From assembly GCA_965644295.1 (NCBI GenBank), contig CBFFRP010000046.1:62001-126000 (forward strand): a stretch of 64,000 bases of DNA, given 5' to 3'. The DNA comes from Paraphysomonas bandaiensis. Lineage: Eukaryota; Protista; Chrysophyceae. Position 1 is the first letter of the stretch; each line of letters begins with the position of its first letter. The position numbers were made by a program, and so were the translations under genes. Of this stretch, positions 36,559 through 45,323 are shown one piece after another. The notes under the pieces are model-generated. The model was given only the letters and a program-made list of their open reading frames with translations, was not told the DNA's origin and did no database searches.

Positions 36559-39500
36559 TCATCCAGATCTCTCATTGATGCTTACTCCATCTAAATCAAT
36601 CGCAGAAGCACAAGTAATACACACTTGTACGAAACAACCAGTCGATTCGTTTTCAACTGTTCTGAATTCTTTCCTATGGGAATCCTTCCTCTCGGTACTC
36701 AACGCTATCAGCTCATCGTACGAGAAATCAACAGCGGCTACTGTTTTGGGGTCTACTTCTCCTTCCCTGCCCTTCTGCAGAACAATCCTACACGAGCGTA
36801 TATCACCAGGAGATGTACTCTCACAGGCAATGATTTCTTTAGAACTCATTATTAAAGTACCATCCTCACATCTCTCAATGGGAATTTCGTGCTTTCCAGT
36901 ATCACAAGTGATGACGCACAATAGATCAGATACTGAGGAGACATCAACCGGGACCATACTGCCTACATTGTGAATACTTTGTATTTGCAACGACACCTGT
37001 TTGCGTTCTCCTTGAGGGGTGCTGCTACGGTTGTTGCTCGTATATGACATGTCATCAGACAGATGACTAAAGTTGTCCCCGCCACGAGATGCCACTGACG
37101 AGCGCATTCTTTTACTCGATGCCATTGACCTATTGTCACTGAACTTTGCCATAGGAGTAGAAAGCATTGGGCTGGCAAGGGCCTCCGGGGACCGCGAGCG
37201 CTCAGCAGACAGGGCATTATCACGATTTATATCTGCTTCGTCGTTATCATGTTTCAAGTGAAAAACAATTTTGTCCAGCGTCTCGCCAATACTGGACTGA
37301 AACTGATGGATCTTTGCCTGCAGATTTTTGTCTGCCGACTCGACGTCAGAGCTTAGATGACTACGAAGTTCATCCTCAGCAGAACTAGTAACTGCAAGCC
37401 GCATGGCTCTATTCATCGGAAACCATCCTATGTCATTGGAGTCTAAACTCCGCCTTACATACTGCTCCAGTCCATCATCATCGTCTTTGTCCTGTTCCCA
37501 TACGTAAATGATAAAATATAAATAGTTCCACATGTTGTGATCAAAACGGATGTGTGTTTTGAATCCGTTCGGAGTGTCTGCTGCTCGGTCGAAAATTTGT
37601 TTGTCAATACCACACATGAAACACTTCTCAGTCGTGTCGTGTAAACGTTCAATTTTCTTCGATCGAAGGTCACCAAAGGTATCAATAATGATACCGAAGA
37701 TGACGTTGAGAAGAACAATAAGCACAATCAAAAAGTAAATGACGTCGATAGCATATCTTGTGTCGAGGGTGTGCGTCATTAAATCACCAGTTCCGTTCTG
37801 CAGACGAACTCCGTACCCAACACAATACTTAAAGCACTTATACAGGTTTTCGCAGTCTTTCTTCGTCTCGCCATCCAGAAATTCGTCTCTAAAATTGAAG
37901 AACTAAAGTACAATTAGATAAACGCAGAGTAATACAGTTCACAATACTCACAATAAAGAAAGAGAAAATGTACGTGACAAAAATTCCCAGCAGTAGAGTC
38001 ATAGCCAGCTGCTTTCTAGGGTTGATGACGGCTAGTAATACGTCTCTAGTGGTGGAGTTTTTCACAATGATGTCAAGAAGTAAAAACGTCAGAAATATGT
38101 CACTGTAATTGATTGCCAGAAGACAAAAAATCATGTAAACAAAGTAATACATCGTTAGAGCGTCCACTGAGGTATAAACAACAGTCATTAGCTTGCTATA
38201 ACCAGCAGCTTCGTAATGCTGATACTTAACGGGAACTCTGACTACCAAGAAAAGAATCAGAGTGAAGGTTGCGAATACCAGCTGGAATGTGTTCAGTGCG
38301 TCCACAACGATGCGGATTTCCTCAGGCATGCGTGGACCATCACCTCCCTTAGCAGTATAGTAGCAGAGGAGTAGCAGGTTAATTATGCATGCCAGGAAAA
38401 ATGATATCCACGTCGCTCTATTTTGGTTAGCTCGACTGAATATACCACTAACGTGCCACTCCTTCAATACCTGTTGGTGCTTTATCTCGCGGTAAAGCTC
38501 ATGAGATCGAAATACAAAATCTTGGAGCTTACTTTCCAGGTTACTTCTGTCTACATCTTCAACGAGCGCATCCTTTGATGCCTTGGCTAAATCAAAGCAT
38601 ATCTTAGGAATATGAAAAAAACGTCTTTGTAACTCGCCACGCCACAATATCTCCACACAAGCCACCTCCGCACCGACAATATCCGTTGCATCCTTCACAA
38701 ACTGCAACTCATTCCTTAGACTAGGTTTGTAATCGCAAAGCATCTGCAGCAGCACCAGCGATTCTGTTCTCAAAACTGTGGTCGCCTCGGCCACTTCTTC
38801 AGAGTCTATCTCATCTTCTTCGGTGGAAGGAGCACACATGAGCTCAATGATGTCCAAGTGAATAACACTCAACACTCTCTCGTAAACAGTCTTTAATCCA
38901 CCTTGCCCTTCAAGCAATCCTTGTAAAATATCGATACCCGTCTTCTTCAGTTCCAACTCTTCCACAGGGACGCAGTCCCTAACCGGCTTCGTGCGCATTA
39001 GTCTGTTGATGGTCTCCACCAATTCCGTGTTCAGCACAAAGTGCTCTTGATTTTTCTGACACGGCCCTTGTATTACCTCTAATATAGTAGCTGAAACACG
39101 AGTTCCTGCATTAGTTGACGTCCTACACGGTATACGACTGACGCAATTCAGGTACGAAACAAAATCGTCAAGAAGGTTTACGGATGAGGCGTTATTCGGT
39201 TGCTCGCGCATAATATCCTGGTTCGGTTGGTAGTGTCCCTCGCACATCAGCTGCAAAAATCGAACTATTACAATATCTTCAGGAAGGTCGGGCTCTTCGT
39301 CTTCTTCTAAAACAATAACGTCATTCCATTTGTGCCAGTTGATCAAGTCCTGAATGGAAATACGCATTTGCCTGAAGAAGAGTTCAGAATCATTGTTGTC
39401 CAGGTAGTCGAACATAGTTTGCTGTACAGGCAGGTTCCCTCCCTCTAGAAAGAGCATTGCCACACACAGTTTTACAGACTCCAGCATTAGACCAGCATCA

Positions 39501-42500
39501 ATGCCGACACTGATTAAGTCAAGACAGAGAGTGGTAGCACCGCAACTGTTTAGAGCGTTGACAACAGGTGCGGCGGCGATATCTTCCTCCTCGCCACCGT
39601 CTTCGTCCCGCTCGTATATGCTCATTCCCCATCTGTTCTCGATCATAGTACGAAATGATCTAATGATCCACGTCGTCGTTTGAACACATCTACTATCCAA
39701 GCGCTTTACATTGTCCACAATTTCCAAGCGGTCTCGTACATGTGCCACTAACTTTTTAATGAAAGGCTCATAACGAACGTCACTAACTACAGATGTATTG
39801 TCCACAAACGGCAACTTCTCAATTTTTGCGATGAAGTGCTTATTTTCTTCTGAGGCAATTTCACGCACGTCGTCGCTATCAACTAGTGCAGCAAGGAATT
39901 CCGAATATTTTTTAGTTACTCTTACCTCGTTGTTGCTAGTTGAAACATCAAGGAGCTCCACACCACTTTCCTCTTCGTTCTCATCATCTCCCTTGTCGAC
40001 AAGAGGTGCGCTAAAATCCATAACCAGCGACTTTCCAGCGCTTTTACTCAGACTATCCATGGCAAACATTAAATATTTCTTATGCTCTTCTGAAAGGGAT
40101 GAGAAATTTGGTTCATAAATATTTTTAACACACGTGAATAGAGTTGAGATCAACTCATGAATTTCTGTCAAAGTCATCTGAACCATGTCACCCACTGGGA
40201 CAACAGTATCGTCAGTTTTGATTTTCGCGGGGTCGTAGCAGGTTTGAAAAAACCCAGATACAATCATCGCACACACCACGACATACTCGATCTCTTGTCT
40301 GCGCACGCCACTACCACCCCACCCGTGTTTTTCAATCTCCTGAAGACTGGGTACAGCATCCTCGAAGACTTTAACATAAGACTGTAGCAGACGCCACATC
40401 GCAGCCGACTGTCCCATTCCTGGAATGACAATCTCTACCTCTATCATTGCATTAAAGAGAAAAAGGCCGAGTCGGCATTTCGCCAGCAATATCGAACGCG
40501 GATCCAATATAGCATCTATTATATCCTTGGCATCAAATACGGATTGCACTTTGGCTTCCACTGTCGTGATATTAATTCTACCTACAGTGCATCCAGACAA
40601 CACTCTGAGGAACTCTAAGTGATACCCAAGTTCGTGTGGGAGGTCGTAAACAGAAATATCAGTTTTCTTATCTAAAAATGGCGCCATCATTTCCACCTTC
40701 TCTTGGTAGGATGGATGGTCGACAGGACAAAAGAAGACTACCATTTTTTGCAGACGGGCAGGAGCAATGAGCTGTTTAACAGTCTCGTACTGATTCTCTA
40801 GCACATTTTTTTCTCCAGCATGTGTGATTGAGGCTAGGAGTGACAAGTATTGAGGGTGTCTACCCTGGCGGCAAACTTTCTCCGTAAATTCTGCGATATA
40901 CGATCGTGGACAGGCCTTCATGAGAGCTTCATTGTTCTTGAATATAGCGTGTATTATTTTGTGGCTTCCTATATCCATGTCGAGAGTATTCAAGAAGAAT
41001 TCAAGGTGATCATAAGCTAGAGCCTGGTTTTCGGAATTCTCTATCACGAACCAATAAAGTAACTCGTTACACAGTGCAACAATATCGCGATTATTTTGAG
41101 CGGCTAAGGGTTTGGTTGCCTCATCAATTTCGTTCAAAAGACGCAAAACTTTGAAAGCAACGTCAAAAAAACCTAAATTGCGAAGTAAATTCTGAATGGA
41201 CGGGTCTGGCGCAAAATCCTCATCGAACTCGAGTACCTTCCTCTGAACTCGACATAAATCTGTCAGATCCCTGAGAATATCTTTAATAGCTTTGTCTGTC
41301 CTTCGATCCGCCTCTGTTTTCAACTCCCCCCACAACTCATTCGTTTCAGAAAACCTTTCTAAGTCTAAAAGAAAGTGGTCGATATTTCTGTACTGGCGTT
41401 CACGTTTAGACGACACTAGTAATTGAACTTTCTTTGCATTCTCGATCAGTACCATCGTAGACGAATGATGTGCCATGAGTACATCTAAGAGGACTTGAAC
41501 CAGGTCAGCATTTGTAAGCATCAAGTTGTCGATAAAAATATCATCAAATCCATCACACCCGAGGGATATTTCTCGACACTCAGCTACGACCTTTCTGAAT
41601 ATCTCTGTAGGAGATCTTGTGTCTGCGCCACTCTCCCACTGATGAAATCCCCGTAAGAGTATTGACAAATTCCTGTCTTCAACAATTCTTTGTACATAGG
41701 CTAAAATATTTACAGCTTCAACCATTGTTTCGAGCTCATGTTCAGGAGCATTCGCATATCGTTCTGGCAGCTGCCACTCGTCGTATTGCTTCACAGCCAT
41801 ATCCTTGAGTTTTTGAACCAAGCGTGCAGCACGGAACACTCGAACCAAACGCACAAGTCTGGCGACTCGAAGCGATTTCGTGTACTTAGCTCCACTTCCA
41901 AGTACTCCAGGGGCTGCAATGATAAACACATCGATAATGACGACAACAATATCAATAACATTCAGTATATTAAGGAAAAACGGAACAACAACTTGTTCCA
42001 CGGCCACATAGCAGTAAAACCGCAATAGTATTTCAGCACAGAAGACAGCGGTAACAAAGTACTCAAAATAAGTATAGGATGGTCCCGTTGCTCCGGTGAA
42101 AGTCTGTGAGACCAGTACAGACAGGGCAACGACAACGAGCAACACTACAAATATGACGACCGGTAGGGACTCCAAAAATGTAAGCATACGCCGTTGCCAA
42201 CTGTCTCCATCCGCCTCCGTGCCCATGCTTTCGAAGGAGCCATTTCCAGCAGAAATTTCAGTCATGACTTTCGACGGACCTCGCTGAATACGTGGTCGCT
42301 TCTTCGAACTGGAAGTCCCACTCCTGCTTTTGGGGCGTTGTGTCGATTCCTCTGTGCCTTCGTCAAGTCTTCTCCTATCCAAGGCAGCAATTAAAGGGCC
42401 AATAACATCCATAAGCTTTTCAGTAGTGCCATAGAAGTTAAACATGACCAGCTTGTGCATAAGCTGCATCATATGTACCGACAGACCATCCCAAGGATTT

Positions 42501-45323
42501 CCTCGCATGTGATGCACGTGCTCAGAGATTAACTGCTGCAGAAGTGCAAAATGGTTCTTGCGTGAGATATCCACATAAGGTAACTGCGGTATTGGATTTC
42601 TAGTAATCTCACTCCAAGTGCGCGTTAAACACGGGACACAGCTGATAACCTGTGGGTCTCTGTCCACATACAAGCGCATGACAAGTGTAACAGCCGCAGA
42701 TTTAAGGGTTTCGTTAACATTCATCTTAATCATTGTTACGAGTGACTCATACGTGAAAAGCTTTTCCAAACTTCGCATGGCGACGTAGTTCCGTCCTAAA
42801 CACATCGATGCTGCCAAAAACAGCTCCGACGCAAAATATTCTGCAACGGCAAGTTTATTCTCTTGCGTGGTTCCAGTGATCCGTTCACCAAATCTGTCTC
42901 CTGGACCGGCTACCCCATAAAGCTCCTGTATGTTTACAGATAGCTTACCGAATAGGCCCAGTGGACTAAAGTCAATTGAGTTGGTGGTCCATGACAGAGA
43001 TAACTGGGGTAGACCTTTGGAAACCAAGGACTGTCCCAGCATCGGTGACGCTGCCTCCTTACTAGCAGGGATATAAAGACCACGGTCCCACTCTACCCGA
43101 ACAGGCCGCGCAGTGTCAGAGTGCACCTGGATAACGATATCATTAAAGTCCTTGAAAACAACCTCCGACACGATTATTTGGTTTCCAACGACCCCACGCC
43201 CTTGACATGTGCAACACGCCCGGAGTAGGTCTAGGTACATGCGGTTCATCTTTGATGACCTCAATTTTTCTGTAAATATTTTGATCTCGCGGGATCCAAT
43301 TTTTTCCTCTTGGAGGTCCATGTTGCTACTCAGCATGTCCGTTACACACTTGGCAGCGAGCTGCTGTGCACCCACATGCGCCAATAGAATTGGCATCGCA
43401 TCGCCAACAAACATTTGGTTTCTTGGGTTGCGCACGATAGTATAAAATAGCATATTGAGGCTGAACCGAAGAATAGTTTGCCCCATAGTGATCACTGCTT
43501 TTTCCTCTTCAGACTTGAAAGCCTGGCTTTTTGCACCAACACCAGATACAGTGTTGTCAGTCCTCACAGATATCGGAATAAGTTTTTTAATTAGCTTCAT
43601 TAGTATGCCCAGAGTGCCTTGATCACACATCATATTCTGCCTGTTGGCAATGAGATTCTTCTGAGGAGGACCATGCAACAACGTGCTGGATGTTGATATG
43701 GAGTAGCCCTGTGCGAACAAGGTAGTTCTCTCTAATATTGACTCGAAGAAAACAATTTCGCCCCTATCCGCTCCTGGCCAGAGCGTTCCTGCAGAGTAGT
43801 CCGACACCGGAACCTTAGTTCTCTCATATATTTTATTTAGAAAGTTTCTGGCAGCGACCCCCACGTACACATCGAGTGGTTCGTCCACCGCTCCCCTAGA
43901 ACACTTTCCCTTCGATCCGGGTCTGTCCTGAGTTTCTTTGTATCTATTTATCAAGAGACTAACAGCTATATTTTTATCCTTCGTCCCGTAGTTAGGGAAA
44001 GTATCCGTCTCATCGTCGTAGTCTCCACGAGCGAGCCACATGCCGTTGACACTCATCTGGATGGCCTTCCCATCTGAGAGCAGGCTATTGTTGCCGTAGA
44101 GTTCCTGGACGCTGAATAGAGTTCCTGGTGCAGACGACGAAGTCGCAGTGCAAAGAGTAGGGCTCGCATCATCATCACCAGACTGATCCATCGCCAAATA
44201 ACGACCGGTATTAAGATTTCGAAATCGGATAAGATCATTTTTCCACTGTACTGTGCCCCCCACCTCAATGGTTTTTGACTCAATCACCCACAAGGAGTTC
44301 GTGTCCACATCGCCATGCACGCTTATTGGCCGAATAGCCACATCGGCAGCGTCTTCAGAAGAGGGCAATGTAGAATGCTCCTCGTCATCCTCACGAGAGG
44401 TACTTGAGTATACAGTGACATTAGAATGTGTCTCAGGGTCGTAAATGAACACTAGCTGTGAGCAGAGTAGCAGATTGGAGTCTGTCACCTCCTTCACGTT
44501 CTGAAAGAGTGACAGCTTCCACGATGAGCTCTCCAAAGAGCAGTTTACCTCGTGAAAGTATTCTGGGGGGGGATCCTTTTCCGAACAGTGAATGTATTCG
44601 TTGGGTCTTTCAGCTACCTTGAGAAGGACCTCAGTACCGCCCAGAATGCGGTCACCCTCGCGATCTATCTTGAATCGTGGAAGAAGCTGCAGCCAAGAAT
44701 ACGAGTTGCCCTCTGCTGTGAGAGATATGCGAATATTTTCCCTCTCGTCTCGTGCAAGTTGATCAGGAACTATAGTCACAAACTTTCCCGACTTAACATG
44801 TAGGAGCTGTGCACAGAATTGCATTTGTCAGGAAATAATACACTGAGTGTGGTGAACGTACTTGTATAATATCCCCGAAAAGAACTGTGGTTCCCATTTT
44901 CTGCCTCATATAGCTCTCATTTAACTTGTTTTCATTGTCACGACCGCGCTGAATACAAAGGTTATAGATCATTTAATACAGGTTACTTTTTTACCCGCAG
45001 GGCCTGAAGATATTTGACTGTGTTGCTATCTTCGATGGGAGTGTGCGATGAAATTTTATGAGTCTGTGTGAATGTTTCGAGTTCATTAGAAGCGGAATAT
45101 TGCCGCTGTAAGTGAATGCAAAACAGAGCATCTTCAAACGATGGTATTGTTTCGTTGACAACAACATCTTCCAACAGTATGCCCTCTGCACACAAATAGC
45201 TATTTATTTTAAGGTTCTTGATGGTGATCAAGTCTCCGATCTTCAGAGTATCTACAATCCATGTTAATTAATTACAAAAATCAAGCGGCTCTCACCATTC
45301 TCAATCGCATTTCCGAAGTCCAT
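36559..45323 (-). CDS. IP3 receptor/RyR-superfamily Ca2+-release channel with an inserted voltage-sensor domain and C2-like tail
   Basis: N-terminal beta-trefoil/MIR motifs (QLLHVKSGKF, RFRNLNTGRYL), RIH repeats, RIH-associated FLQLMCEGHY and EVIQGPC, six-TM channel with LNVIFGIIIDTFGDLR, zinc finger CFMCG...HIRFDHNMWNY. Intron 37903-37951 joins ORFs 37889-44824 and 36559-37779. Start MDFGNAIEN at 45323. Confidence 0.95.

What the first reader, a model, noticed from the sequence alone, without database searches (positions are those of the whole stretch)
41804..42199. IP3-receptor-family channel with a complete extra voltage-sensor domain inserted in its cytosolic scaffold
Seen: in-frame within a single large exon are four helices. 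S1 is LPVVIFVVLLVVVALSVLV. S2 is FEYFVTAVFCAEILLRF, with the charge-transfer F and the E/R pair. S3 is LNVIDIVVVIIDVFII, with the conserved D. S4 is SLRVARLVRLVRVFRAARL, six Arg at every third position. No pore follows. The insert sits between KLVMFNFYG...LIAALD and ETMVEAVNILAYV, which match mammalian IP3R NLIYFGFY...LLAILD and DTKLKIIEILQFI, i.e. a variable cytosolic loop far upstream of the channel's own six-TM domain. Established: canonical IP3R/RyR are ligand-gated and have no such extra VSD; skeletal muscle obtains voltage control from a separate protein (CaV1.1 coupled to RyR1). Inference: this protein may hard-wire voltage sensing to Ca2+ release in one chain, with the VSD in the same or an apposed membrane. 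I know of no description of this architecture but cannot exclude one.
Basis: partly seen in the sequence, partly recalled or inferred. Interest (0 to 1): 0.95.

Follow-up and report, generated by a model that had tools for sequence, protein, structure and literature searches.

The report
Voltage sensor inside IP3-receptor-like channel
A single-celled, non-photosynthetic silica-forming protist encodes a giant calcium-release channel of the IP3-receptor family with a complete voltage sensor built into a cytosolic loop; I found no description of this design, which may let membrane voltage, not IP3, steer calcium release.

Summary
A five-exon gene (36559-45323, about 2856 aa) encodes an IP3R/RyR-family channel. 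Its 6.9-kb exon 4 holds a four-helix segment (41804-42199) that passes Pfam Ion_trans for S1-S4 only (E 5e-12). The segment models as a voltage-sensor domain (VIA Z 13-14 to Nav/Cav sensors).

It replaces the loop at mouse IP3R1 residues about 897-968. It is not a chimera. Six paralogues in this genome carry it, as do at least 73 clusters (50% identity) in public data, always at this site. Across 107 members the S2 Phe, S2 and S3 acids and five or six S4 arginines are almost invariant.

The link from S4 to the next scaffold helix is fixed at 26-31 residues. The upstream tether varies from 35 to 102. Most IP3-coordinating residues that could be aligned are lost; the Ca2+-site glutamates are kept.

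Most likely this is a voltage-modulated, Ca2+-dependent release channel, but function is untested. No RNA reads could be obtained for this gene. Nine literature searches found no description.

The scan met this architecture before, on paralogues in this genome (s1-440725, s1-442359). The organism is probably a colourless siliceous chrysophyte, not a diatom.

The parts
36559..45323 (-). Whole coding region of the channel gene: five exons, four introns of 44-55 nt, CDS 8571 nt, about 2856 aa. Mature residue number = ORF residue number + 118.
   Evidence: Read from the sequence. All four junctions agree with uninterrupted ORFs of homologues P0006, P0014 and P0009.
45296..45323 (-). Exon 1, start ATG at 45323. 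A 44-nt GT..AG intron follows (45252-45295).
   Evidence: The N-terminus matches the first residues of P0006.
44995..45251 (-). Exon 2, N-terminal part of the suppressor / beta-trefoil-1 domain. A 46-nt intron follows (44949-44994).
   Evidence: Weak Ins145_P3_rec match to profile 6-77 (E 0.0023, below the cut-off).
44862..44948 (-). Exon 3 (29 codons). A 55-nt intron follows (44807-44861).
37952..44806 (-). Exon 4, 6855 nt. It holds the ligand-binding-like domains, the scaffold, the VSD insert, RIH_assoc and the channel's own S1'-S5'.
   Evidence: ORF. Pfam: Ins145_P3_rec 6-112, MIR 161-245, RIH 390-566, Ion_trans 891-1008, RIH_assoc 1853-1942.
42377..42454 (-). Scaffold helices just before the insert (ORF aa 791-816). 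They align to mouse IP3R1 around residues 876-897.
   Evidence: phmmer alignment to 5xa0/3jav.
42200..42376 (-). N-terminal tether (ORF aa 817-875): basic and Ser-rich, poorly conserved, variable in length.
   Evidence: Pairwise identity 0.26 against 0.47 for the whole protein. Length ranges 35-102 residues in 31 sequences.
41804..42199 (-). The reported segment: pre-S1 helix plus S1-S4 of the inserted voltage-sensor domain (ORF aa 876-1007).
   Evidence: AF2 model, pLDDT 78.9. Foldseek top 50 hits are all Nav/Kv/KCNQ channels. VIA Z 13-14.3, rmsd 2.1-2.8 A over about 120-125 residues.
42110..42166 (-). S1 (aa 887-905). Fully hydrophobic, with no Hv1-type Asp.
42017..42067 (-). S2 (aa 920-936), with E921, charge-transfer F928, E931 and R935.
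   Evidence: In 107 family members: Phe 104, Glu/Asp 107, Arg 100.
41918..41965 (-). S3 (aa 954-969), with N955, D958 and D965.
   Evidence: In 107 members: D958 in 107, D965 in 98.
41819..41875 (-). S4 (aa 984-1002), with six Arg at every third position (986-1001), preceded by K983.
   Evidence: Positions 1-6 are Arg/Lys in 99-105 of 107 members. S4 is the most conserved part of the insert.
41738..41818 (-). Post-S4 link (aa 1003-1029): a helical extension of S4, then a conserved W-x-x-P-x-R-Y turn.
   Evidence: The distance from the last S4 charge to the next scaffold helix is 26-31 residues in all 107 members, and 27-29 in 91. W, P, R and Y are invariant in the six paralogues. The AF2 helix runs through model position 142.
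41645..41737 (-). First scaffold helix after the insert (aa 1030-1060). It aligns to mouse/rat IP3R1 from residue 969.
   Evidence: Profile search against the PDB. E1030 and T1033 are invariant.
38999..39268 (-). RIH_assoc domain, with both Ca2+-activation glutamates retained (the C-E-G-H and E-x-I-Q-G-P-C motifs).
   Evidence: Pfam. Alignment to RyR1/RyR2 chains.
37952..38434 (-). The channel's own S1'-S5' helices (aa about 2131-2291). S4' is uncharged, as in IP3R.
   Evidence: Translation and conservation.
37903..37951 (-). Intron 4 (49 nt, GTGAGT..TTTAG, phase 0) inside S5. Many database entries end here, or read through it.
   Evidence: Homologue tails.
36559..37902 (-). Exon 5: end of S5, pore loop with the atypical filter (N-G-T-G-D), S6, the zinc-finger-like linker, and a tail of about 300 residues with no Pfam match.
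   Evidence: Ion_trans profile 171-239, E 7e-8.

Best explanation
The gene encodes a tetrameric Ca2+-release channel of the IP3R/RyR superfamily. A canonical four-helix voltage-sensor domain (VSD) was inserted once, long ago, into the scaffold loop that corresponds to IP3R1 residues about 897-968.

Shown here:
- The insert is in frame.
- It is conserved in six paralogues and in at least 73 sequence clusters, always at the same site.
- It has the VSD fold.
- It keeps the full sensing apparatus: five or six S4 arginines, the S2 Phe, and the S2 and S3 acids.

Inferred mechanism:
- Both ends of the VSD are cytosolic, and all helices of one chain enter the membrane co-translationally. The VSD therefore sits in the same membrane as the pore, with its outer face to the lumen or the outside.
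- A voltage change moves S4.
- S4 continues as a helix into the cytosol. A short, conserved link of fixed length (26-31 residues) joins it to the first scaffold helix after the insert.
- S4 motion therefore pulls on the helical scaffold that IP3 binding moves in canonical receptors. This biases opening or closing of the S6 gate.
- The upstream tether is a loose leash.
- Most IP3-coordinating residues that could be aligned are gone and the Ca2+-site glutamates remain. Voltage together with Ca2+, not IP3, is the likely control.

Whether voltage triggers release or acts as feedback on the store potential, and in which membrane the channel sits, remain open.
For: Architecture:
- Pfam finds Ins145_P3_rec, MIR, RIH, RIH_assoc and Ion_trans (profile 6-117 only) in one ORF.
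- A second Ion_trans match, to the pore loop and S6, lies in exon 5.

Fold:
- The AF2 model has pLDDT 78.9.
- The Foldseek top 50 hits are all voltage-gated channels.
- VIA gives Z 13-14.3 with rmsd 2.1-2.8 A over about 120-125 residues to Nav1.7 and Cav3.2 sensors.

Insertion site:
- It is mapped on solved IP3R1 chains on both sides.

Conservation:
- 30 IP3R-length homologues carry the insert.
- 73 of the best 150 representatives (50% identity) match the VSD plus the adjoining scaffold helix.
- 16 distant representatives all carry RIH and RIH_assoc, and 13 carry Ion_trans.
- Six paralogues in this genome have every key residue invariant.
- Across 107 members: S2 Phe 104, S2 acid 107, S3 Asp 107, S4 positions 1-5 Arg/Lys in 99-105, position 6 in 99.
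- S4 is more conserved than the protein average, 0.54 against 0.47.

Coupling:
- The post-S4 link is 26-31 residues. The N-terminal tether is 35-102.

Ligand sites:
- By alignment to IP3R2, R265, Y567 and R568 are replaced, K569 is Arg, and R269 is kept. The residue list is taken from PMC13503717.
- The family alignment shows no Y-R-K or R-T-T-G-R motif in any member.
- The RyR Ca2+-site glutamates are kept.

The insert stays in the mature message in relatives:
- Transcript-like contigs L012 and L013 carry complete intron-free ORFs that include the VSD.
Against: - No functional data exist for any member.
- I could not compute the distance from the IP3R scaffold loop to the membrane. About 17 residues lie between the end of the S4 helix and the scaffold helix, spanning at most 60-70 A. 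The loop may be too far from the membrane unless the scaffold sits differently in this family.
- The ER membrane potential is generally thought to be small, so the physiological stimulus is unclear.
- Equivalents of K508 and R511 could not be aligned to a solved structure by a tool. Their loss in this clade rests on the family alignment plus my recollection of the IP3R1 sequence.
- The taxonomy of the homologues could not be established.
Confidence: 0.55

Rival explanations
1. The four helices are a membrane anchor or targeting device that no longer senses voltage. They hold the cytosolic ring close to the membrane, or sort the channel to a particular compartment.
For: The long, variable N-terminal tether would suit a passive anchor. 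Many VSD-like bundles, including the S1-S4 of TRP channels and of IP3R itself, are structural (established knowledge).
Against: Structural VSD-like bundles lose their S4 charges. Here five or six arginines, the charge-transfer Phe and all counter-charges are kept in about 100 of 107 members despite overall identity down to 24-30%. The S4-to-scaffold link is also fixed in length.
Confidence: 0.17
2. The VSD itself conducts ions, like Hv1 or an omega pore. It would supply a counter-current that keeps the store potential from collapsing during Ca2+ release.
For: There is no pore domain next to it. Pore-less VSD proteins that conduct are known, such as Hv1 (established knowledge). A release channel needs a counter-ion flux.
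Against: S1 is fully hydrophobic and lacks the Hv1 selectivity Asp. The hydrophobic Phe plug and an unbroken arginine ladder are conserved. These features argue against a leak path.
Confidence: 0.06
3. The VSD sits in a different, apposed membrane (for example the plasma membrane) while the pore sits in the ER. The protein would then be a one-chain equivalent of the CaV1.1-RyR1 junction.
For: The N-terminal tether is long. The IP3R scaffold projects far from its own membrane (established knowledge), so the insertion loop may lie closer to an apposed membrane.
Against: Ten helices of one polypeptide are inserted co-translationally at one translocon, and no route is known by which part of a chain moves to another membrane (established knowledge). 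The C-terminal link is short.
Confidence: 0.05
4. Artefact: an assembly chimera, a retained intron, or a cassette that is normally spliced out.
For: No RNA reads for this gene could be obtained.
Against: The segment is in frame with no stops, inside a 6.9-kb exon. Six paralogues on different contigs and more than 70 independent clusters have it at the same site, with amino-acid-level conservation. Intron-free transcript-like contigs retain it. The real introns of this gene are 44-55 nt with GT..AG ends.
Confidence: 0.03

Closest known systems
Mammalian IP3 receptors (ITPR1-3; e.g. PDB 3JAV, 5XA0, 6DQJ, 12AI)
   Same: Same domain order: beta-trefoil/MIR, RIH, helical scaffold, RIH_assoc, six-helix pore domain and the zinc-finger-like linker after S6. 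The Ca2+-site glutamates are retained. The flanks of the insert align to IP3R1 residues about 876-897 and from 969 on.
   Different: Mammalian receptors have a soluble loop of about 70 residues where this protein has a tether plus a four-helix VSD. Most IP3-coordinating residues that could be aligned are replaced. The selectivity filter is atypical.
CaV1.1-RyR1 coupling in skeletal muscle (voltage-induced Ca2+ release)
   Same: A voltage sensor of the Nav/Cav/Kv type would control a release channel of the RyR/IP3R superfamily.
   Different: In muscle the sensor is a separate protein in another membrane, and acts through protein contacts. Here sensor and release channel form one chain, most likely in one membrane. 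Coupling here is inferred, not shown.
Voltage-sensing phosphatase (Ci-VSP / TPTE)
   Same: A pore-less VSD whose S4 continues through a short linker into a cytosolic effector. TPTE2 appears among the sequence hits.
   Different: In VSP the effector is an enzyme at the C-terminus. Here the VSD is an internal insert with both ends joined to a channel scaffold.
Sperm Na+/H+ exchanger SLC9C1 (sNHE)
   Same: A canonical VSD grafted onto a transport protein that is not a voltage-gated channel. S4 is linked to cytosolic regulatory domains (PMC10620091, listed).
   Different: There the effector is a secondary transporter and the VSD follows the transport domain. It is not an insert in a cytosolic solenoid.
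Hv1 proton channel
   Same: A VSD without an adjoining pore domain.
   Different: Hv1 has an S1 Asp selectivity filter and only three S4 Arg, and it conducts H+ itself. This VSD has a hydrophobic S1 and six Arg.

Membership tests
IP3R/RyR superfamily of Ca2+-release channels | RIH (RYDR_ITPR) and RIH_assoc domains | tested here: met
   PF01365 E 1.9e-30 and PF08454 E 1.4e-21, both above their cut-offs.
IP3R/RyR superfamily of Ca2+-release channels | N-terminal beta-trefoil / MIR ligand-binding-type domains | tested here: met
   PF08709 E 2.1e-15 and PF02815 E 6.8e-7. Aligns to IP3R1-3 residues about 121-321. Exon 2 supplies the first part.
IP3R/RyR superfamily of Ca2+-release channels | C-terminal six-helix pore domain with pore loop, S6 and the Cys/His linker | tested here: met
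   Translations. Ion_trans profile 171-239 in exon 5. Conserved in homologues.
IP3R/RyR superfamily of Ca2+-release channels | Ca2+-activation site glutamates in the RIH_assoc/ARM3 region | tested here: met
   Both Glu positions align to the RyR1/RyR2 motifs. That these are the Ca2+ ligands is established knowledge, recalled rather than tested.
IP3-gated receptor in the strict sense | Basic IP3-coordinating residues (R265, R269, K508, R511, Y567, R568, K569) | tested here: not met
   Alignment to IP3R2 gives R265 to Pro, Y567 to Asn, R568 to Pro, K569 to Arg, with R269 kept (residue list from PMC13503717). No family member has the Y-R-K or R-T-T-G-R motif. K508 and R511 could not be aligned to a structure by a tool. 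By the family alignment and recollection they are Asn and Cys here.
Voltage-sensor domain (S1-S4 of the voltage-gated ion channel superfamily) | Four-helix bundle with the VSD fold | tested here: met
   AF2 pLDDT 78.9. VIA Z 13-14.3 with rmsd 2.1-2.8 A to Nav/Cav sensors. Foldseek top 50 hits are all voltage-gated channels. Pfam Ion_trans profile 6-117.
Voltage-sensor domain (S1-S4 of the voltage-gated ion channel superfamily) | S4 with basic residues at every third position | tested here: met
   Six Arg at ORF aa 986-1001. Conserved in 99-105 of 107 members.
Voltage-sensor domain (S1-S4 of the voltage-gated ion channel superfamily) | Charge-transfer centre (S2 Phe, S2 acid, S3 Asp) and an outer acidic residue | tested here: met
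   F928, E931, D958 and E921. Phe in 104, acid in 107 and Asp in 107 of 107 members.
Voltage-sensor domain (S1-S4 of the voltage-gated ion channel superfamily) | Voltage-driven charge movement (gating current) | not testable with these tools
   Needs electrophysiology or voltage-clamp fluorometry.
Classical voltage-gated cation channel (Kv/Nav/Cav type) | S4-S5 linker and pore domain directly after S4 | tested here: not met
   The Ion_trans match stops at profile position 117. IP3R scaffold follows S4. The pore is about 1300 residues away.

The most novel reading that the evidence does not exclude
A whole, previously unrecognised family of one-chain voltage-gated Ca2+-release channels. In it a canonical voltage sensor, inserted in the cytosolic scaffold of an IP3R-type channel, has taken over from IP3 as the primary trigger. 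It gates a distant pore through the scaffold rather than through an S4-S5 linker. This would be a new electromechanical coupling route, and a natural single-protein counterpart of muscle excitation-contraction coupling.
Probability: 0.4. Interest if true: 0.95.

Novelty: new variant of a known kind. Interest (0 to 1): 0.88.

Why it matters
Every known channel of the RyR/IP3R superfamily is controlled by ligands or by a separate voltage-sensing protein. A release channel with its own canonical sensor would show a third way to couple voltage to Ca2+ release. Sensor and effector in one chain would make a compact system for studying how S4 motion travels through a large cytosolic scaffold.

It would also extend the short list of proteins in which a voltage sensor drives something other than an adjacent pore (VSP, Hv1, sNHE).

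For protist biology, it suggests that excitable flagellates link electrical signals to Ca2+ stores without IP3. The family is large (at least 73 clusters at 50% identity) yet appears only as 'hypothetical protein' or as truncated entries, so it has probably been overlooked in surveys of Ca2+ channels.

Tried and rejected
Expression and splicing of this gene remain untested.
- VSD against the channel's own transmembrane parts, three chains given exon by exon (complex prediction): no verdict, score 0.00. This is evidence neither for nor against.
- phmmer of ORF aa 360-480 against the PDB, to place K508/R511: no hit.
- Taxonomy of homologues: the listing of cluster members, the look-up of encoding contigs, the protein-atlas search (best score 0.78) and fold search atlas gave no usable organism names for the family.
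- Literature: nine full-text searches (one search failed on syntax) and six papers read gave no description of an IP3R/RyR-type protein with an internal VSD. Two papers that name both Pfam families concern the ordinary pore match.
- 'Diatom' reading of the genome: rejected. There are no light-harvesting Chloroa_b-bind genes and no PsbO in 62.6 Mb, although at least 7 silicon-transporter loci are present.
- Hv1-like reading: rejected, because there is no S1 Asp.
- A specific donor channel for the VSD: rejected. Sequence hits favour Kv1 and Cav domain III and four-domain channels. Structure hits favour Nav domains IV and III. No single source stands out.
- The spliced full-length protein was never joined or searched as one sequence. 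Exons were handled separately by reference, as required.
Full report
**1. Observation**

The stretch 41804-42199 gives only stops on the plus strand. It lies inside a 2311-codon ORF on the minus strand, 37889-44824.

Pfam finds five domains in that ORF:
- Ins145_P3_rec, residues 6-112
- MIR, 161-245
- RIH, 390-566
- Ion_trans, 891-1008
- RIH_assoc, 1853-1942

The Ion_trans match covers profile positions 6-117 of 241, which is S1-S4 and nothing more. Its E-value is 4.6e-10 in the ORF and 5.5e-12 for the segment alone. Both are above the curated cut-off.

**2. Gene model**

Reading the DNA shows four short GT..AG introns of 44, 46, 55 and 49 nt. The exons are:
- Exon 1: 45323-45296
- Exon 2: 45251-44995
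- Exon 3: 44948-44862
- Exon 4: 44806-37952, which contains the insert
- Exon 5: 37902-36559

The CDS is 8571 nt, about 2856 residues. Every junction is matched by uninterrupted sequence in homologues P0006, P0014 and P0009.

Exon 5 carries the end of S5, the pore loop, S6 and the Cys/His linker.

I handled the exons separately by reference.

**3. Where the insert sits**

phmmer aligns the helices before the insert to mouse/rat IP3R1 around residues 876-897. A 28-sequence profile of the region after the insert aligns its first helix to IP3R1 from residue 969 (E 3e-14).

The tether, VSD and link therefore replace the loop at about 897-968 of IP3R1. From memory, that loop lies in the helical/central linker domain between ARM1 and ARM2 and contains the SIII splice site. 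I did not verify this with a tool.

**4. It is a voltage-sensor domain by fold and by residues**

Fold:
- An AlphaFold2 model built on 31 sequences has mean pLDDT 78.9. It shows a pre-S1 helix, four long helices, and an S4 helix that continues about 9 residues beyond the last charge.
- The Foldseek top 50 PDB hits are all voltage-gated channels, though the E-values are only about 0.01.
- VIA-align gives Z 13-14.3, with rmsd 2.1-2.8 A over about 120-125 residues for most of the top rows, to sensors of Nav1.7, Cav3.2, KCNQ5, CatSper and others.

Residues:
- S4 has Arg at 986, 989, 992, 995, 998 and 1001, preceded by K983.
- S2 has E921 and F928-x-x-E931-x-x-x-R935.
- S3 has N955, D958 and D965.
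- As I recall them, these spacings are those of the Shaker charge-transfer centre.

**5. It is conserved, so it is not a chimera**

- A region-restricted search found 30 IP3R-length proteins (2245-2969 aa) with the insert. Identity in the region ranges from 57% down to 31%.
- An exhaustive profile search of 1.84 billion representatives gave 48 hits at E <= 1e-30.
- Of the best 150, 73 match the VSD together with the adjoining IP3R scaffold helix (36 of them are 2000 aa or longer). A further 32 are four-domain channels, and the rest are partial.
- Sixteen distant representatives, 24-44% identical over their full length, all carry RIH and RIH_assoc. Thirteen carry Ion_trans. The VSD is at the same site in all.
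- In this genome, at least 10 ORFs carry RIH_assoc. Six have an intact VSD insert: C46, C238, C152, C182, C288 and C324. All key residues are invariant among these six.
- Two further copies (C426, C409) have S1-S3, but S4 is broken or missing.

Conservation of the key positions across 107 family members:

| Position | Members that keep it (of 107) |
|---|---|
| S2 Phe | 104 |
| S2 acid (Glu/Asp) | 107 |
| S3 Asp (D958) | 107 |
| Second S3 Asp (D965) | 98 |
| S4 position 1 (Arg/Lys) | 105 |
| S4 position 2 | 104 |
| S4 position 3 | 100 |
| S4 position 4 | 101 |
| S4 position 5 | 99 |
| S4 position 6 | 99 |

S4 is more conserved than the protein as a whole: pairwise identity 0.54 against 0.47. 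The upstream tether scores 0.26.

**6. An asymmetry that points to coupling**

The number of residues between the last S4 charge and the next scaffold helix is 26-31 in all 107 members, and 27-29 in 91 of them. The tether before S1 ranges from 35 to 102 residues.

The link contains a W-x-x-P-x-R-Y motif that is invariant among the paralogues. This is the pattern expected if S4 motion is passed to the scaffold through the C-terminal link, with the N-terminal side acting as a leash. The reading is an inference.

**7. Ligand sites**

IP3 site:
- The coordinating residues are listed in PMC13503717.
- Against IP3R2, the alignment gives R265 to Pro, Y567 to Asn, R568 to Pro and K569 to Arg. R269 is kept.
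- No member of the 31-sequence family alignment has the Y-R-K or R-T-T-G-R motif. The 265-269 region is a variable acidic loop.
- The K508/R511 region could not be aligned to a structure by a tool. By the family alignment and my recollection of IP3R1, these positions are Asn and Cys in this clade. The Arg is kept in a deeper clade.

Ca2+ site:
- The two Ca2+-site glutamates of RyR/IP3R are present.

The family therefore looks Ca2+-sensitive but not IP3-gated.

**8. Topology and mechanism**

A VSD has both ends on the cytosolic side, so an insert in a cytosolic loop is topologically consistent. All ten helices of a chain are inserted co-translationally. The VSD should therefore share the pore's membrane, with its outer face towards the lumen or the outside. 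An apposed-membrane arrangement is unlikely.

My best reading (0.55) is voltage-dependent control of a Ca2+-dependent release channel through the S4-to-scaffold link.

Several things remain open:
- The sign of the effect (trigger or feedback) and the membrane in which the channel resides.
- Whether about 17 non-helical residues can span from the membrane to the scaffold loop, which I could not compute.

A complex prediction of the VSD with the channel's own helices gave no verdict.

**9. Is the insert retained in mRNA?**

There is indirect evidence. Two contigs from one public run, L012 (8540 nt) and L013 (7912 nt), hold complete ORFs of 2796 and 2610 residues. They leave only 23-99 nt outside the ORF. 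They have no introns at any of the positions where this gene has them, and they keep the VSD. They look like transcripts, but I could not confirm the library type.

**10. Organism**

- The assembly is 62.6 Mb.
- It has at least 7 silicon-transporter loci.
- It has no Chloroa_b-bind gene and no PsbO. It is therefore a non-photosynthetic silicifier.
- Ten-helix SITs occur in siliceous chrysophytes such as Paraphysomonas and in loricate choanoflagellates (PMC5100055).
Earlier 'diatom' notes do not fit.
- Published statements that diatoms lack IP3Rs (PMC11085791; bioRxiv 2024.02.19.579948) are therefore not contradicted.

**11. Novelty**

Nine full-text searches and six papers on IP3R evolution and on protist, oomycete, diatom and brown-algal Ca2+ channels gave no mention of an internal VSD.

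The scan reported the same architecture before, on paralogues in this genome (s1-440725, s1-442359). Those agents also found no description.

The nearest functional analogues are pore-less VSD proteins (VSP, Hv1, sNHE) and the two-protein CaV1.1-RyR1 system. I class the finding as a new variant of a known kind and rate its interest as high.

Noticed in passing
G000 whole genome: The genome has at least 7 silicon-transporter (SIT) loci but no light-harvesting Chloroa_b-bind genes and no PsbO. It is therefore a non-photosynthetic silicifier (a Paraphysomonas-like chrysophyte, or possibly a loricate choanoflagellate). It is not a diatom, as several earlier notes state.
   Followed up: partly
window 37903-37951 and homologue tails: A conserved phase-0 intron sits inside S5. 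Many database entries of this family (about 2340-2380 aa) stop a few codons into it, and one (P0005) reads through it in frame. Public protein sets therefore mostly hold pore-less truncations.
   Followed up: yes
window 37783-37812 (exon 5): The pore filter reads N-G-T-G-D instead of the G-G-(I/V)-G-D that a deeper clade of the same VSD-bearing family keeps. Ion selectivity may therefore differ within the family.
   Followed up: partly
G000:C426:43200-43900 and G000:C409:8650-9400 (L019, L020): Two further IP3R-like paralogues have S1-S3 of the insert, but S4 is interrupted by a stop (C426) or is missing from the ORF that carries S1-S3 (C409). They could be pseudogenes, copies with an intron there, or degenerate sensors.
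   Followed up: partly
window 36559-37450 (exon 5 tail): About 300 C-terminal residues after the linker have no Pfam match. They are Ser-rich and then apparently folded.
   Followed up: no
G000:C395:128689-129099 and C144:125455-125757: RIH_assoc-bearing ORFs (2886 aa and 468 aa) gave no VSD hit in the own-genome search. VSD-less relatives therefore coexist with the VSD-bearing paralogues.
   Followed up: no
G000:C426:48863-49183, C150:45199-45516, C565:57712-58035, C28:97088-97405: Weak VSD matches (E about 1e-4) lie in ORFs of 950-1034 aa. They are presumably ordinary voltage-gated channels of this organism.
   Followed up: no
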